From: Podarcis vaucheri
Taxonomy: Eukaryota
Reading direction: 5' to 3' (one strand)
Assembly (NCBI GenBank): GCA_965113315.1
Contig: OZ220367.1
DNA length: 64,000 bases
Shown piece by piece: positions 18,795 to 51,521 of the stretch (position 1 is its first letter; each line of letters opens with the position of its first letter). The notes under the pieces were generated by a model. The model saw nothing but the letters and a program-made list of their open reading frames with translations. It did no database searches and had not been told where the DNA came from. The position numbers and the translations under genes were made by a program.

Positions 18795-18974
18795 CCGTAC
18801 GAAGCTGGCTGGGAACCAGCCCTCACTGTCCATTATTCTGCCCCACCACCATTCTTTGTTAGTTGCATCCATTACTTCAATGACATCACCAGCCTTGAAG
18901 CCCAGCTCTTGGTCATCCATGGTGACATGATCCCAGAGTGCTTCGGCGTAGACAACACCACCATCACTGATGAG
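18795..18974 (-). CDS. ARHGEF4: ARHGEF4 SH3 exon: [60 protein letters not shown]
   Basis: 180 nt, phase 0/0, ctttctctgttccag acceptor, CGG|GTAAGA donor; SH3 motifs [16 protein letters not shown]. Confidence 0.97.
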
Positions 18975-34050: not shown

Positions 34051-35686
34051 AATCTCAATAATTACCTCCATCCATATGAGATGTCCAGGCTCTGAGGTCA
34101 AGTGTAGAGGTCCTGTTCTGTTCCCTCACCTCCCATTTGCTAACATAAAGGGGGCAGCTGGGACTTTGATGTGTCCTGGAAAAAGAAGCTTGCCTGTCTC
34201 CTTAGCGAGCAATGAAGGCTTTTCTTTCCCAGCAGGCTTTTAGGAATGTGTTTTTCTGAAATTGCTTTTCACCTGCTATGGATCTTAGAAATGTATGCTT
34301 TTTTATCAGGCGGATACATTGCTAATGTTTTATTGTCTTAGATGTATTTCTTTGCCTAATTATTTAGAAAGACAAGGTACACCTTTTGGAAATGAAAGAT
34401 AAATAGAACAACCTCCTAAAAAGGATGGGATACTGGCAAAAAAGATCAGAGGGAGACAAATTTGATACCTTATCTGAGTAGCAAGCAACACTTTATACAA
34501 ATATATATATATGAACCTCACTAGAGAGTCATTACAGTCAAATATGATTTTGGAGTGCCTGTTAGAGAAGCAAGGAATGTTACTTACTTTCCTTTCGATG
34601 TCATAATGTACAATGTTATTACTGTTTATCACATTGCTGTCACAGAATTACTAATAAGATCTATTCCTGCCTGCTTTTCAAGGCTAGGCTCTAAGTTTTA
34701 GTGAGACACACACACTTTCTTAAGGCAAGGAAAGGTGATCATTATCGATTCCTCCCACCTCAAACTCTAGATCTTGAAGGTGTGCAAGTCCAGCAATTTA
34801 TTATCCAAAAGGTACACAAGACAGGTGAGTGCATGGACAGAAATTGTGTGGGAGCACCACACATGCTACTTCGAATTCCCTCATGGAAGAAAGGCAAGAT
34901 ATAAATGTAGTCATAAGTAGCTCACTTCTGACAATGTTCATGCTGCTACATACCTCTGTTGAAGTGTAAAGTCCCAGTAATTAGTAATTTGGTTATTGCC
35001 TACTGAGGGTTAATTGACACACATTTCCATCCATGTTTATTTGAATACAGTTTGGCTTTATTTTGAGGAACAGTTATAACAGTTCTTTTTATAAGAAGCC
35101 AGAATTTATTCGATTTTTAAATGTCAAGCACCAACATTAGAAATTTACAATATGCCATGAATAAATGCATGAGGAATCTTATTGACAAAACAGCCTCAGA
35201 ACTCTTTTTCTTATAGCTCTCCCAGGATACAGTGTATAGAAAGCATTGGGTATTTGTCAGGGCTGATTTGCATGGTCAAAAATTGGGCTCTCCCCAGCAC
35301 CAATGTTTTTCATTGTACGCTCGCCAGCCATCTGGGGTTGTAATGAATTCTTAGAGGCGCATCCTGATCCAGTTATGAAGGTCTGTGTATGTAAGCAGAG
35401 GCTCTTTTTACATACTACCTGCTGGATCAGGAACAATGGAGGTTAACTGGATTCACATCTGCATTCTACATTTGTGTGTGGACAACTAATGCCAGAACTA
35501 GTGGCACAACTTGAATTGATTTGGGGATGAATGACACACATTCAATCAAGGCAAAGAGCTTGATTATAAAATAAATAAATATGAAAATAAATAAATATGA
35601 ATTGGCCCTCAGTATTTTATTTCTGGCTATGGCAAAACAAAAGTTCTGTTTGTTTTTTTATTAACACTGCAGACTGCTGCAGCATA

Positions 35687-36040
35687 CAGTGGTGCCTCGC
35701 AAGACGAAATTAATTCGTTCCGCAAGTTTTTTCATCTAGCGAATTTTTCGTCTTGCGAAGCACAGTGTCGGAAAAGTTTTGGAAAAGCTTCAAAAATCAC
35801 CAAAAACCTCAAAAAAGGCTACCACACCGCGTTCTATGAGTTGCTCCTCGAAGTCAAGTCACAACTGTATTAACGGTGTTAAGAAAAAGGAAACAAACTT
35901 GCAAAAAACGCAAGACGTTTTCATCTTGCGAAGCAAGCCCATAGGGAAATTCATTTTGAGAAGCAGCTCAAAAACCGCAAAACCCTTTCGTCTAGCGAGT
36001 TTTTCGTCTTGTGAGGCATTCGTCTTGCGGGGCACCACTG
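35687..36040. mobile_element. Tc1/mariner-pogo (Tigger-like) MITE family B, 354 bp
   Basis: TIRs CAGTGGTGCCTCGCAAGACGAA / TTCGTCTTGCGGGGCACCACTG, TA on both sides, internal repeats of a CGTCTTGCGA-like motif. Confidence 0.9.
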
Positions 36041-37316
36041 TACAACATTTATTTATATTTAAAATGTATACACTGCCTTTCCAAATATGTTGCTCAAAGC
36101 AGTAAGCAAAGAAGAATGGAAATTGTAGCAGAAGCTGGAGCTAAGAAAACCAAGCTGAGGCCTTTCATTTTTTTTATTTCGTCATGAAAGCAAACTCCCC
36201 CCGCCCCACACAACTACTCTCTAAAGTTATACAATGTCCATATAGGAAATTAGGCTTTTACCCAGACAAGGAAAACAGATTTTTGGTTGGGTTTATTTTT
36301 CCCAACTTTACATTAAACTAAGAAAACAATACATTTAAGAAATGCTACATGCTCTTGTGTTGTTTGGTTTGCCTTAAGTGCAGAATGGGATTGCCTGTTC
36401 ACATGAATAGAGTCTATGCAAAAACCATTCTGAGAACTAACTAGCTGTCAGGCTTACATCTCTGAGTGTATCCCAGGCTTGCTTCCATGTGCCAAAAATC
36501 ACAAAGTATTTTCAAAATGAGCTTTCTTTAAAAAAGAAGGTGTCTAGCACAACAACAGAGTGACTCATGTAACTAGTAGGAATGGAGAACACTGCACAGA
36601 ACACGACACACACATAACTTAGAAAGAATGGCTCTTGATAATGAATTCAGTTCTTTTAGGGTGGAATTAGCATTAAACTCCAAGGAGAGCAGTTTCATTA
36701 TCAAATATTGGACCGCGTGAGATGAATACACCTGAAAGTTCTTGCTTTGCAACTTCAATGCCAGTAAGGGGTTTGTTGCGTTTCTGGAGGGCTGGATTTC
36801 TACTCAAGGCTTGGGAAGCAAGCCACACTTGTGAATTTTCCATTGGACAATGTCACAGGATTTATTTGAACTTCAGTGTTTCTTGAAGAATCAATTGCCT
36901 TTGACACTACCAGCCTGACTGCTTTTCCCTTGCCTCCCCTCACTCCCACTTTCAATCCATCAGTGTCTGAATTTCCAGATGGAACAAGACTGGTAAATAA
37001 AAATATATCATTTCCAAGTTGATTATCGAGTTAGCTTTTCTCCATTTTAAGAGGCCTGGATCAGCTCTCCCACAACATCTCGATATTTCAGCTAGAAACA
37101 GAAGGGACAAAGGCAGTTTCTTGTCCAAAGATCCCACCAACATATTTTTTTTTACACGTTTCTCTACACATAAGCACTCTGAAGTCATTAAGAAAATGGG
37201 AGAAAAGCCAGTGAAGACATAAATTCCACAGGGCGGTCGCTGAACATAAACATAGATTCCTGATGTACTCTAATGATCCACCATTAATCAATTACAGCTA
37301 ATTGGGCATTACTCAC

Positions 37317-38450
37317 AACCCAGCGCACATATTCTCGAAGCCCCGATGGTCTCAATTAGAGAGCAATACTTGCTCTAATGGATTGGGCTTTTCTCACAGC
37401 AGCTGCAGACATGTAGCCGTTTTCTTGTATAATAGTTCATCAAATAAGTGCCACTTAACAAGCCAATGGAGTGCATAGATAGAGTCTGCTGAGCACTTCC
37501 AAGTCCATTCAGCTAAGAGGCGGAGTGTGTCTGTATGCAGCATCATTGTGATTACGGCCAGAGGTGGCCGGCAGCGACTCAGTTAACCAAGCTGGCCGCA
37601 TTACTTCTTCCCTTTCCAAGATGTGATGCTGCTCTGGCTGGCAAGGCACAGGCAACGGGAACAGGGAGAGCCAGGGATACAGTGCGCCGATGAATAATCA
37701 CAGGAGACATGCTCAGACACATGGCTACGACAGAAGACAAGGCGAACCTGAATCAGACAATGACGAGCTGACCTGCTGGTCTGCAGCCCAGTCCTGGAAG
37801 CCCCCAGCCACTCTTTGCCACGCAACACAATCCTGCTTCTCAGTAAACTGCCAGGAGAAACATGAGCACAACATTAATGATGATGAGAAAGAGCAGAATG
37901 ACAAAGACCACCACGCGCTGCGTTTCCGGGTTCATGTTGCACCGGAGGAATGTGTGAAGCGCACTCCATTTGTGCCTGCTCTGGTTCGACCCCTTCGCCA
38001 TGTCTGGGATTGGCCTCAGCCCCTCGAAAAACAGCGTCTTAGCAGGTTAGCAGCAGCGCTGTTTCCGGAAGAAAGCATGAGGGGAGGCAGGGGAGGGGGC
38101 TACAAACAATAGAGGCATTTCTGCAGCTGTCAGGAAGCAAAACCTGATCAATTCGGTACAGCCATTATTATGATCGGCTTCCGAGCATAATACACGCACA
38201 TGCAAGTACATCCTCTTCCCCCAAGCAATCCTCCTTATCTGGTTTTTGTTTTTTGTTTTATCTCAGCAAAGCACCAGCTTCCCACTTCATCTTCAGCAAA
38301 GTAACTGCCTCCATAAGCATTAGCTGAGTGAAGCTCCTATAGGAAGAGGGCTGCGTGTGCTGGAGCCCAGAGATCTCAGCGGCGATACTGGCTTTCTAAA
38401 GAGCTAGTCAGCTATTTGCTAAGCGCTGTAGCTAGGATACATGCAAGCCC
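37317..38450 (-). promoter_or_regulatory. Putative internal promoter / alternative first exon of ARHGEF4 carrying SMIM39
   Basis: Locally CpG-enriched and repeat-free. Contains the SMIM39 ORF and short ORFs, and ends at a GTT|GTGAGT donor (37316). The transcription start is not determinable from sequence. Confidence 0.5.
37840..38001 (-). CDS. SMIM39: Small integral membrane protein 39-like, 53 aa: MAKGSNQSRHKWSALHTFLRCNMNPETQRVVVFVILLFLIIINVVLMFLLAVY*
   Basis: Strong Kozak gacATGG, basic N-terminus and a ~23-residue hydrophobic C-terminal helix. LRCN..P..QRVVV...INVVL.FLLA matches the recalled human SMIM39, which also lies inside ARHGEF4. Below the ORF-track size cut-off. Confidence 0.85.
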   Translation of the reverse strand: MAKGSNQSRHKWSALHTFLRCNMNPETQRVVVFVILLFLIIINVVLMFLLAVY

Positions 38451-40556
38451 TAGCAACGGGGGAGAGCGGGGAGGGCAGCGAGGAAAATGTGGGTCTTTCA
38501 AGGAGGGTTACAGAAGTGGAGGCAAAAAAACCAAAGGCAGCTGTGTTGGAACCCTCCAAAATGCACAGCTCTGAAGTATCTTTATTAAGATCAGCCAAAA
38601 TGTTGCCAAATAGGGCGAAGCTTTTGAGTTCTTCAGAATTCTTTATCAAGCTAGGCACTGCCCAAGCAGGGGTTGGGGAAGAGGAGGGGAAGGCATGGGT
38701 ACAAAAATCCGGTTAGCTGTTGAAGCCTGAAGGTCTGCATTCAGACTCAGTCTGCAGATGGAGACTTTAACTGAATTAGTCTCTACAAGATATCTAGGAT
38801 TGAAAGATGAAGAGGCAATAGCCCAATTTTGAAAACAATTTTGATGCTGTTAATCAAATGTGGCATTCGTTAAAAAAAATACAGCTATGAGCTGAGTAGG
38901 CAAAAATAAATTAACAAAATTAATAAGATTAATGCAGGTGCTTCTTCAGATATTGCGTAACGGCAATAGCAGTAGACAGAAAAGGAAATACAAATTGTAA
39001 GTGTAGATAACTTAATTCTTCAGCAATGGAAAAAAGGAAAAACTTGGCCAGCCTTGGGTAGTGAAAAAGCAAAGGCAGCCACTTGCATCCAGAAAAAAAG
39101 CCTCCATGATTGTTACAAAATAACAAGCAAGCTTTCCCGGGGTCCAGAACTCTTAATGAGGCTGGAAGCTATACAAAGGAGAGTTGCAGGGGAAGGGAAC
39201 AAAAAGAGAGCAAAAATAGGCTGGTATGTAGTCAAAAGATCTTCGTTTAGACCCAATTTCAAGATGGAATTTGCATATTGTCTCTTTAAATAGACACATC
39301 AGTTTCAGCAAACTATTCTAAAACTGATTTTCAATCATCATGTAAAATATACAAAAACATCTATGTTCTGTATACTCTGAATGAGAAGTTTCCTATGATC
39401 GGAAATAGGAATTGACCTCGTTCAGATCTATTTATTATTATTCTTTAATTAATTAATTTATATACTGCCCTCCATCCAAAGTTCTCAGGTGCTTTCAACA
39501 TTTTTGAAATCTAGAGATTCACTATGATTTTTAGCAAATAATTCACACAGCTACTCAGAAAAATGTGGGAGGACAGATGCACTCTTCCCACAAACACACC
39601 ATGCTAATAGCAACCAGGTCTACTTAATCATCTATCACAAGCATGTATGGCAGGAAGCAAAACCACAGTTTGTGCACGATTTAATTATGCAGATAACCCA
39701 TTGTCTTAAGTTATAATGTTATACACTAACTTGGTAACTTCTGATTCAATGGCAGTGTATATGCTTTAAATACAGTAAATAAAAAGAATAATACTGTAAT
39801 ACAGAAACAGGTGGGGGAGGCAGGTGGACACACAATGGTTCCTTAATCTACACTGGGATGTTTTTCAAATGTTAGTACTTGAGAGACCAGTTCTGTTCCT
39901 GAACAATTTGTCTGGCCTGATTGGCCTCTTCTCTCCCTTGCTAACATAATTTACTTTTTGCCCATAAATCTTTGAAAGTCCTCACCAAAGTTATCTATAT
40001 TTGTGAATTGACACAAAAGAGTGGATTTGGAAGACATAGAGTCAACACAAGCATCCTGTTTGACTTGAGTTCCTGGTCAGATTGTGGGAGAGAATGCATA
40101 TTCCACATTTTATTTTTAAGACTTTGTACGAAAGACTCCAAGCCACTCAGGAGACAGGCGCTGGACCATGGTCTGATTGAGGGAGATTTCCATTTGGTAT
40201 TAAACAAACAGACTACCATATCTGATTTAGGGACTTAGCACAAACATGTAGGCAGGCAGGCAGGCTTAGTATGCAAACTCCCACCACCGCCCCAGCTTAG
40301 ATTGTTATCTCCCTTGTGTCTAGGAAAGGCTAAATGTTATAAAAGCAAAAGTATTACCAGTTTTTCACAGAGAGATCAACATTTCAACAAAAGACTCATG
40401 CAACCATCTTAAGCTGGCAACAGTACATGCTCAGGATGTGAAGTTTGACTTTTTGCACTGTGCAGTCATATTCGTCGAAAACTTTATGGTAGTACGGCAA
40501 ACACAGAATCAATGGCACTGCCACTTTATCAGGAAAGAAAAAAGTCAAACCATACC

Positions 40557-40879
40557 CACTGGCGGAGGAACGGGGAGCAGGGGGGAGCGCACCGCCTCCG
40601 GCACCATCAGGGAGGTGGGCACCATCGCAGCCGCCCCCCGACACACACCTCGCACCCCCCCACTGTGCAGGGCGCCATGCCCCCTCAGGTAGCGCGCCAC
40701 ACCCCTCGGGAGCATGTCACGCCCCCATGGGTGGCATGCCACACCCCCGGGACGCACACCACGGCCCCACAGGTGGCATGCCATGCCCTGGGATGCACGC
40801 CACACCCCACAGGGCACGTGCCAGCCATGCCCCCGCCTGCTCTCTGCTCCCAGTGCCGGAGCATGCAGCTTCGCCACTG
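40557..40879. mobile_element. GC-rich hAT-type MITE with internal degenerate tandem repeats
   Basis: TIRs CACTGGCGGAG / CTTCGCCACTG; 8-bp duplication ACCATACC / AGCATACC; repeated GGTGGCATGCCACACCCC-like units. Confidence 0.8.
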
Positions 40880-41134
40880 AGCATACCAGTTCAACCAACA
40901 TTCCTGTAAGTTCATTAAGCTGTAGCCTTTTTCCATTGTTGTTCTGCACAAAAAGAAAGCATCTATTCAGAATGCAGCTTCGCAGCTGCAGGTTCTTCCC
41001 AAAATGATGTGTCTTTAATGCAACATCTAATTGAAATAAACATGTCAAAATGCCACCTTTCTGCATGTATTCTTTGTACATGGAACCGTGTCTGAAAGGA
41101 GCTTGTATAACACCTGTAGCCTTGTGAAACATTG

Positions 41135-44371: not shown

Positions 44372-44530
44372 AAATAAAAAGATTTTCCAGTGGCACCTTA
44401 GAGACCAACTAAGTTTGTTCTGGGTATACGTTTTTGTGTGCATGCACAAGTTGGTCTCTAAGGTGCTACTGGACAGTCTTTTTATTTATTTCAACTACGT
44501 CAGACCAACCCGGCTACCTACCTGAATCTG
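44372..44530. mobile_element. Penelope-like non-autonomous palindromic element
   Basis: 25-bp inverted repeat TCCAGTGGCACCTTAGAGACCAACT / AGTTGGTCTCTAAGGTGCTACTGGA; flanking 10-bp direct repeat TTCTGCATCT (44362-44371 and 44531-44540). Confidence 0.7.
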
Positions 44531-44717
44531 TTCTGCATCTGGTCACCTGCCACCTCAGCCCCAAGCCCAGGGTGCCAGCAAAATCCAACCAGACCCTTCC
44601 AACCAGAATCTGAAAATCAGTAGGTTGCCAGCACTCCTGACTGTCAGACCTTACTGGACATTCCTGCAGATTCAGCTAGACAAAAGCTAAAAGTCCAATT
44701 GAATTCAGTCAGACTTA

Positions 44718-45080
44718 AAGTAAAGGTAAAGGTACCCCTGCCCGAACGGGCCAGTCTTGACAGACTGTGGGGTTTGTGCGCCCATCTCACATTTATTGGC
44801 CGGGGGCCAGCGCTGTCCGGGGACACTTCCGGGTCACGTGGCCAGCGTGACATCGCTGCTCTGGCGAGCCAGAGCCGCACACGGAACGCCGTTTACCTTC
44901 CCGCTGGTAAGCGGTACCTATTTATCTACTTGCACCCGGGGGTGCTTTCGAACTGCTAGGTGGGCAGGCGCTGGGACCGAACAGCGGGAGCGCACCCCGC
45001 CGCGGAGATTCGAACCGCCGACCTTTCGATCGGCAAGCCCTAGGCGTTGAGGCTTTAGCCCACAGCGCCACCCGCGTCCC
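44718..45080 (-). mobile_element. Full-length Sauria SINE, young copy
   Basis: 5' GGGACGCGGGTGGCGCTGTGG (A box), GGTTCGAATC (B box), (ACCTTT)n tail, intact CpGs, duplication AGTCAGACTTA (44707-44717 and 45082-45092). Confidence 0.93.
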
Positions 45081-51387: not shown

Positions 51388-51521
51388 CTCATTAATAGCA
51401 AGCTGTTCTCCTCCTCCACCTGGGTGGCCATAACGATGGCTAGAACTTCGGAAGTCTTCATACAAGTCTTCTTCACTTCCCACATCATCACTGGTTTTCT
51501 CCAGTGATCCATCAGCAATGA
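51388..51521 (-). CDS. ARHGEF4: ARHGEF4 APC-binding-region exon: IADGSLEKTSDDVGSEEDLYEDFRSSSHRYGHPGGGGEQLAINE
   Basis: 134 nt, phase 1/0, tcttattttag acceptor, GAG|GTACTG donor; GGGGEQLAINE is the Asef APC-binding motif and joins in frame to the SH3 exon. Confidence 0.95.

What the first reader, a model, noticed from the sequence alone, without database searches (positions are those of the whole stretch)
37317..38001. Candidate bicistronic SMIM39-ARHGEF4 transcript with a uORF ladder gating a de-repressed GEF isoform
Seen on the minus strand, in order: the SMIM39 ORF (38001-37840), a 47-aa ORF (37722-37579, MCLSMSPVII...), a 21-aa ORF from 37440 (MNYYTRKRLHVCSCCEKSPIH) and a GTT|GTGAGT donor at 37316. 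No AATAAA was noticed in between. No ATG is open in frame to the donor, so splicing to the SH3 exon would rely on the Kozak ATG at 18920. A last ATG 14 nt before the donor would run out of frame across that start. Known: uORFs and overlapping ORFs throttle downstream translation; the ABR and SH3 mediate APC control of Asef. Inference: one mRNA makes a membrane microprotein plus a translationally limited, APC-independent Asef, and the microprotein might act with it. This is the best candidate for an undescribed system in the window.
Basis: partly seen in the sequence, partly recalled or inferred. Interest (0 to 1): 0.8.

Follow-up and report, generated by a model that had tools for sequence, protein, structure and literature searches.

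The report
SMIM39 microprotein gene inside ARHGEF4
This is the reptile copy of SMIM39, a known 53-residue membrane microprotein gene sitting in an intron of the Rho-GEF gene ARHGEF4. The available RNA-like data show it on its own unspliced transcript, not on the proposed two-protein SMIM39-ARHGEF4 message, so the finding is largely ordinary.

Summary
The SMIM39 ORF is real: nine aligned sequences, fish to reptile, share 22 invariant residues. It lies on the same strand inside the 32-kb ARHGEF4 intron between the APC-binding exon (ends 51388) and the SH3 exon (starts 18974).

The "uORF ladder" is at chance level: 10 ATGs against 12.1±2.3 in shuffles, longest ORF 50 aa against 55.6±21. A donor-like site as good as GTT|GTGAGT occurs about once per 415 nt on this strand.

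The SMIM39-ARHGEF4 link is already described. Mudge et al. 2019 place human SMIM39 in an alternative first exon of ARHGEF4, with no independent transcription seen in human, mouse or zebrafish.

Here, RNA-like contigs from two related species run colinearly through the proposed donor. One 1928-nt contig spans 36159-38076. Coverage ends at about 35130, just before three AATAAA signals, and is essentially zero upstream of 38400. That fits a single-exon SMIM39 mRNA with a long 3'UTR. No 37317>18974 junction was seen, but contigs cannot exclude a minor spliced form.

One hint remains unexplained: sequence divergence rises sharply about 75 nt past the donor-like site.

The scan had already noted this ORF (s1-856320).

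The parts
37840..38001 (-). SMIM39 coding sequence: 53 aa plus stop, with the hydrophobic helix at the extreme C-terminus
   Evidence: ORF. Eight homologues (E 2e-25 to 8e-9), including a Cyprinus carpio protein. The nine-sequence alignment has 22 invariant positions. No Pfam family. By eye, about 23/41 identical to the C-terminal part of the human SMIM39 sequence printed in the supplement of PMC6886504.
38002..38320 (-). 5' leader and likely transcription start zone of the SMIM39 RNA
   Evidence: Contigs reach 38076 and 38169-38320 (X1) and 38213 (X2). Depth is zero from 38400 to 40999, apart from 1.42 in one X1 bin at 38600-38799.
37317..37839 (-). Stretch between the stop and the donor-like site, holding the supposed uORF ladder (10 ATGs)
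   Evidence: ATG and ORF content at chance. No unusual RNA fold, z=+0.88. No Rfam match. Nearly invariant between the window and organisms A and B.
37311..37319 (-). Donor-like site GTT|GTGAGT (last exon base 37317)
   Evidence: Sequence. Rough matrix score 6.0 bits, within the top 4.5% of GT sites on the strand. The X1 contig crosses it unspliced, and no joint or loose end is listed there.
35131..37839 (-). Colinear continuation of the SMIM39 RNA, read as a long 3'UTR
   Evidence: X1 contigs cover 36159-38076 and 35131-35685 plus 36045-36099. X2 contigs cover 37287-38213, 36432-37310, 35311-35684 and 35129-35327.
35036..35110 (-). Cluster of three AATAAA signals (first bases 35110, 35062, 35041) just downstream of where the contigs end
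   Evidence: Contigs of both species end at 35129-35131.
35687..36040 (.). 354-bp miniature inverted-repeat transposon inside the 3'UTR, an insertion specific to the window genome
   Evidence: TA duplication at 35685-86 and 36041-42 and 21/22-nt terminal inverted repeats. Contigs of organisms A and B skip it. Very high depth in all four runs.
51388..51498 (-). End of the ARHGEF4 APC-binding-region exon (...GGGGEQLAINE, donor GAG|GTACTG)
   Evidence: Matches PDB 2DX1 ARHGEF4 residues 26-60, E 5.6e-14. Donor.
18795..18974 (-). ARHGEF4 SH3 exon (LISDGG...FVR), phase 0 at both ends, containing the ATG at 18920
   Evidence: Pfam SH3_1 8.6e-12. PDB ARHGEF4 3NMZ/2PZ1/2DX1 E about 1e-33, and in 2DX1 residues 61-120 directly follow the APC-binding match. 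Sequence.

Best explanation
The ORF at 38001-37840 is the orthologue of SMIM39, a vertebrate-wide microprotein. It has a short basic N-terminus and a transmembrane helix at the very C-terminus. From that layout I infer a tail-anchored topology, inserted into a membrane after translation. The gene lies on the same strand inside the ARHGEF4 (Asef) intron that separates the APC-binding exon from the SH3 exon. In this reptile lineage the main RNA appears to be a single-exon, colinear transcript. It starts at about 38.1-38.3 kb, reads straight through the GTGAGT at 37316, and ends near 35.1 kb at a cluster of three AATAAA signals (inferred from where the contigs stop). It is about 3.1 kb long here and about 2.75 kb in relatives that lack the transposon. 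On that RNA the ORFs after the stop are ordinary 3'UTR sequence. A spliced SMIM39-to-ARHGEF4 form, as annotated in human, mouse and zebrafish, may coexist. Because SMIM39's stop would lie 523 nt before the first of many exon junctions, I infer such a form would be a predicted target of nonsense-mediated decay and a very poor template for Asef.
For: SMIM39 identity: plus the human sequence and description in the PMC6886504 supplement. Position within ARHGEF4; in PDB 2DX1 the APC-binding and SH3 matches are contiguous at residues 60/61. Colinear RNA: X1 has a single 1928-nt contig spanning 36159-38076 across the donor. X2's downstream contig (depth 7.4) is at least as deep as its contig over the coding exon (4.9), which does not fit an intron. 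Both species have essentially no coverage from 38400 to 40999, which serves as the silent control that these runs are RNA. Both end at 35129-35131, about 20 nt before the AATAAA at 35110, which is followed by two more. Chance-level ORFs. Donor-like sites are common on this strand.
Against: The runs X1 and X2 are labelled RNA only as a guess, and contigs carry no strand, no poly(A) tails and no minor isoforms. The two raw RNA runs of organism B did not cover the exon at all, so there are no read-level junction or end data. The X2 contigs break at 37287-37310, close to the donor. Divergence steps up about 75 nt past the donor (1 vs 20 substitutions in X1, P=1.8e-4; 4 vs 21 in X2, P=3.8e-4), as an exon boundary might. 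In human, mouse and zebrafish, annotators found no independent transcription of SMIM39.
Confidence: 0.6

Rival explanations
1. As in mammals and zebrafish, the SMIM39 exon is mainly an alternative first exon of ARHGEF4 and is spliced at 37317 to the SH3 exon at 18974. The colinear contigs would then be unspliced or intron-retaining molecules. SMIM39 is the translated product, and Asef output from this mRNA is negligible.
For: The Mudge et al. [quoted passage not shown] SMIM39 is listed as an ARHGEF4 alias in PMC7281527. GTGAGT is present, and the acceptor at 18974 is a genuine phase-0 acceptor. Conservation falls sharply about 75 nt past the donor. The X2 contigs break near 37300.
Against: No joint or loose end at 37317 appears among the listed rows. 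An X1 contig crosses the site. Downstream depth is no lower than exon depth in X2. Coverage stops in both species at an AATAAA cluster rather than fading along an 18-kb intron.
Confidence: 0.25
2. One reading: one mRNA yields SMIM39 and, through a gating ladder of uORFs, a small amount of an Asef that starts at the ATG at 18920. That Asef lacks the APC-binding region and the first SH3 strand, is constitutively active, and works together with SMIM39.
For: The frame arithmetic is correct. The ATG at 18920 has A at -3 and G at +4. Asef is autoinhibited by its SH3 domain binding DH-PH, and the APC-binding peptide spans the ...LAINE|LISDG junction (review PMC8100458), so a product starting at 18920 would lack both controls.
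Against: ATG number and ORF lengths are at chance. The context of the ATG at 18920 is largely set by the conserved Thr-Met-Asp codons. From established knowledge, reinitiation after a 53-codon ORF followed by 10 further AUGs, the last overlapping the start, should be close to nil, and the mRNA would be a predicted target of nonsense-mediated decay. No junction evidence was found here. Only four papers in the library mention SMIM39, and none reports a function.
Confidence: 0.05
3. The X1 and X2 contigs are genomic DNA or nascent pre-mRNA, so the read-through says nothing about the mature RNA.
For: The tool marks their RNA status as a guess, and contigs cannot show strand or ends.
Against: Both runs cover the same 3.2-kb block and leave the adjacent 2.6 kb essentially empty. 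Their total contig size (72-85 Mb) is far below the 1.3-1.6 Gb of the DNA-like runs. Pre-mRNA from the upstream ARHGEF4 promoter would also cover 38400-41000.
Confidence: 0.1

Closest known systems
Human, mouse and zebrafish SMIM39 (GENCODE ENSG00000284479; Mudge et al. 2019, Genome Res 29:2073, supplementary data)
   Same: A microprotein of similar size (53 vs 56 aa) with the motif LRCN..P..Q.VVV and the helix ...INVVL.FLLA. It sits in the same position and on the same strand within ARHGEF4, upstream of the SH3 exon. It is conserved across vertebrates.
   Different: In those species the ORF is described as lying in an alternative first exon that is always co-transcribed with ARHGEF4 exons. 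Here the RNA-like contigs run colinearly to an AATAAA cluster, which suggests an independent 3' end.
Microprotein ORFs in 5' leaders or first exons of longer genes, such as the 50-aa CDS in the MKKS 5'UTR listed next to SMIM39 in the same supplement
   Same: A small conserved ORF upstream of a larger coding sequence in the same locus. Whether the two products cooperate is an open question.
   Different: For those cases the shared mRNA is documented. Here the shared mRNA is not shown, and the downstream start would lie inside a domain and behind 10 further ATGs.
Nested intronic genes with their own promoter and poly(A) site
   Same: Same-strand gene inside a long host intron, with coverage bounded on both sides and an AATAAA cluster at the end.
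   Different: No cap or poly(A) data were available to prove the ends.
N-terminally truncated, constitutively active Asef constructs (Kawasaki 2000; Mitin 2007; Murayama 2007, as cited in PMC8100458)
   Same: A product starting at 18920 would lack the APC-binding region and part of the autoinhibitory SH3 domain.
   Different: Those are laboratory constructs. There is no evidence here that such an isoform is made.

Membership tests
SMIM39 orthologue | ORF of about 53-56 aa with a conserved LRCN-P-Q-VVV motif and a C-terminal hydrophobic helix | tested here: met
   invariant L19 R20 C21 N22 P25 E26 Q28 V30-32 ... N43 V44 V45 L46 M47 F48 L49 L50 A51 across 9 sequences. Match by eye to the human sequence printed.
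SMIM39 orthologue | Located within the ARHGEF4 locus, same strand, upstream of the SH3 exon | tested here: met
   APC-binding exon ends at 51388, SMIM39 lies at 38001-37840 and the SH3 exon starts at 18974, all on the minus strand.
SMIM39 orthologue | Brain or CNS expression and peptide support | not testable with these tools
   The tissue of the runs is unknown. Two raw RNA runs showed no cover of the exon.
Bicistronic SMIM39-ARHGEF4 mRNA (alternative first exon) | Exon junction from the SMIM39 exon to an ARHGEF4 exon present in RNA | tested here: inconclusive
   No joint or loose end at 37317 among the listed rows, and an X1 contig crosses it unspliced. Contigs drop rare forms and 124 loose-end rows were not shown. 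A protein search with the SH3 exon returned only genomic-type ORFs.
Bicistronic SMIM39-ARHGEF4 mRNA (alternative first exon) | No independent 3' end for the SMIM39 RNA | tested here: inconclusive
   Leans towards not met. Colinear contigs in two species end at 35129-35131, next to three AATAAA signals, but no poly(A) tails were seen.
Regulatory uORF array | ATG or ORF content, or conservation of the ORFs, beyond what the sequence composition gives | tested here: not met
   10 ATGs vs 12.1±2.3, with 88% of shuffles having at least as many. Longest ORF 50 aa vs 55.6±21, reached by 55% of shuffles. Conservation of the individual ORFs in distant species could not be tested.
ARHGEF4 (Asef) | Order of APC-binding region, SH3, DH and PH, with the GGGGEQLAINE|LISDG junction | tested here: met
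   plus the junction peptide quoted in PMC8100458. The paralogue SPATA13 was not formally excluded.

The most novel reading that the evidence does not exclude
A minor SMIM39-led, 37317>18974-spliced mRNA exists in this lineage too. On this reading the roughly 600 nt after the SMIM39 stop are nearly invariant because they form a leader controlling how much APC-independent Asef, lacking an intact SH3 domain, is made alongside the membrane microprotein, and the two products act together at membranes.
Probability: 0.05. Interest if true: 0.6.

Novelty: already known. Interest (0 to 1): 0.2.

Why it matters
SMIM39 has no known function, and its relation to ARHGEF4 has only been noted in a supplementary annotation table. 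If reptiles really give SMIM39 its own poly(A) site while mammals and fish always co-transcribe it with ARHGEF4, the microprotein can be made without ARHGEF4 exons. That would argue against obligatory coupling of the two. As it stands, this is an orthologue of a described gene with ordinary 3'UTR sequence behind it.

Tried and rejected
2. I searched the protein collection with the SH3 exon, hoping for RNA-derived ORF fragments that carry the upstream junction. All 120 listed hits were genomic-type ORFs, preceded by translated intron ending in Q at the acceptor and running on into the translated intron after the exon, so this was uninformative.
3. The two raw RNA runs of organism B gave no cover of the exon and matched only the transposon.
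4. An RNA structure or known RNA family in the conserved block was rejected: z=+0.88, and the only Rfam hit was a sub-threshold chance match.
5. The 'Kozak ATG' as evidence of a start was rejected, because its context is largely set by the SH3 codons Thr-Met-Asp.
6. The contig break in X2 at 37287-37310 does not fit the pattern a k=31 branch exactly at 37317 would give, so I did not count it as splice evidence.
7. The spliced (joined) model was not built or sent to any search. Frames were worked out exon by exon by reference.
8. The human SMIM39 sequence printed in the paper was compared by eye only and was sent to no tool.

Full report
**Observation**

On the minus strand the window holds all the listed features:
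- a 53-aa ORF at 38001-37840, with an in-frame stop just upstream;
- ORFs starting at ATG 37722 (47 aa) and ATG 37440 (21 aa, nested in a 33-aa ORF from 37476);
- GTT|GTGAGT with last exon base 37317.

No AATAAA or common variant lies between the stop and 37317. The first AATAAA is at 36866, and there is a cluster at 35110, 35062 and 35041.

The frame that is phase 0 at 37317 is open only from 37355 and has no ATG. The ATG at 37330 is phase 2. Read on by reference in the SH3 exon, it runs 33 codons out of frame across the ATG at 18920 to a stop at 18874-18872. I did not build or search the joined sequence.

**Is it more than chance?**

No.
Dinucleotide shuffles give 12.1±2.3 ATGs and a longest ORF of 55.6±21 aa against 50 observed.
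- On a rough donor matrix built from remembered frequencies, 154 of 3401 GT sites on this strand score at least as well as 37317. That is about one per 415 nt. A better site lies at 37773, and the genuine donor of the APC-binding exon scores lower.
- The stretch has no unusual fold (z=+0.88) and no Rfam family.

**What the genes are**

The 53-aa ORF has no Pfam family. It does have eight homologues, down to a carp protein. The nine-sequence alignment has 22 invariant positions, covering LRCN-PE-Q-VVVF and the C-terminal helix NVVLMFLLA. By eye it matches the human SMIM39 sequence printed in the supplement of Mudge et al. 2019. Because the hydrophobic helix ends two residues before the stop, I infer a tail-anchored topology.

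Around it, on the same strand, lie ARHGEF4 (Asef) exons:
- The APC-binding exon ends at 51388 (PDB 2DX1 residues 26-60, E 5.6e-14).
- The SH3 exon is 18974-18795 (2DX1 residues 61-120, E about 1e-33; Pfam SH3_1).
- DH and PH exons follow further down.

SMIM39 therefore sits in the 32-kb intron that the canonical mRNA removes between ...LAINE and LISDG.... That peptide is the core of the APC-binding site (PMC8100458).

**What is already known**

The supplementary table of Mudge et al. [quoted passage not shown] It reports brain expression and weak mass-spectrometry support. A 2020 review lists SMIM39 as an alias of ARHGEF4. The co-transcription idea is therefore described, though only as an annotation note. 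Only four papers in the library mention SMIM39, and none reports a function.

**RNA evidence for this lineage**

No listed run holding the exon is on record as RNA. Fourteen small contig sets are guessed to be RNA, and four raw RNA runs of a close relative were offered. I laid two contig sets (X1, organism A; X2, organism B) and two raw RNA runs on 35000-40999.

- The raw runs covered only a transposon and gave no information on SMIM39.
- X1 has one 1928-nt contig that is colinear from 36159 to 38076, so it passes straight through 37317. It also has a contig covering 35131-35685 plus 36045-36099.
- X2 has contigs at 37287-38213 (depth 4.9), 36432-37310 (7.4), 35311-35684 and 35129-35327.
- Both sets have essentially zero depth from 38400 to 40999. 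This serves as the silent control: these are transcripts starting at about 38.1-38.3 kb, not DNA and not pre-mRNA from the upstream ARHGEF4 promoter.
- Both end within 2 nt of 35130, about 20 nt before the first of three AATAAA signals.
- In X2, depth downstream of the donor is no lower than over the coding exon, which does not fit an intron.
- No joint or loose end at 37317 is among the rows shown.

The simplest reading is a single-exon SMIM39 mRNA of about 2.75 kb (3.1 kb here, with the transposon) that has its own poly(A) site.

Limits: RNA status is a guess. Contigs carry no strand, no tails and no rare isoforms. The loose-end table was truncated.

**What speaks for a real exon end**

Substitutions between the window and X1 number 20 in 36159-37239 but only 1 in 37240-38076 (P=1.8e-4). 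For X2 the counts are 21 in 36432-37310 and 4 in 37287-38213 (P=3.8e-4). So about 600 nt after the stop are as invariant as the coding sequence, and the step lies about 75 nt beyond GTGAGT. This may mark a used exon boundary, a constrained proximal 3'UTR or an enhancer. A protein search with the SH3 exon returned only genomic-type ORFs.

**Mechanism**

Shown:
- a conserved microprotein ORF;
- its nesting in ARHGEF4;
- colinear RNA-like contigs that cross the donor.

Inferred:
- own promoter and own poly(A) site;
- tail-anchored insertion of the protein.

If a spliced SMIM39-ARHGEF4 mRNA exists, established rules argue against it being a useful Asef template. SMIM39 has a good start context (G at -3, G at +4) and 53 codons, so reinitiation after it should be poor. 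Ten further AUGs follow, and the last overlaps the ATG at 18920. The SMIM39 stop would also lie 523 nt before the first of many exon junctions, the classical trigger for nonsense-mediated decay. The strong context of the ATG at 18920 is largely set by the conserved Thr-Met-Asp codons of the SH3 domain and is not evidence of a start.

**Verdict**

For this genome the data favour an independent, unspliced SMIM39 mRNA (confidence 0.6). Novelty: already known. Interest 0.2. The earlier scan note s1-856320 flagged the same ORF as a reptile SMIM39-like microprotein, and my homologue search agrees with it.

Noticed in passing
window 35685-36042: A 354-bp miniature inverted-repeat transposon (35687-36040) with a TA target duplication and 21/22-nt terminal inverted repeats (CAGTGGTGCC[T/C]CGCAAGACGA), which looks Tc1/mariner-like. 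Contigs of organisms A and B show the empty site, so it is a recent insertion in the window genome. The family is very abundant in all four runs, with depth in the thousands.
   Followed up: partly
window 37240-38320: A block of about 1.1 kb (promoter zone, SMIM39 coding sequence and 600 nt after the stop) is almost invariant between the window and two related species, while the next 1 kb differs by about 2%. The step lies about 75 nt past the donor-like GTGAGT.
   Followed up: partly
window 38016-38078 and 38047-38211: ATGs upstream of the SMIM39 start (20-aa and 54-aa ORFs) lie within the X2 contig but mostly outside the main X1 contig. This suggests the main transcription start lies around 38.08-38.17 kb.
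   Followed up: no
window 40500-41000 and 44500-45000: Two G+C-rich stretches (0.57-0.61, CpG observed/expected 0.5-0.6) lie in the same ARHGEF4 intron. The first had no cover in X1 or X2. Their nature is unknown; they could be further promoters or repeats.
   Followed up: no
protein P0003: One SMIM39 homologue has its last residues replaced by a 17-residue extension (...FLLAYGSILKWQSGIKVTLFI). It could be a frameshift, a lost stop or a splice variant at the end of the coding sequence in another species.
   Followed up: no
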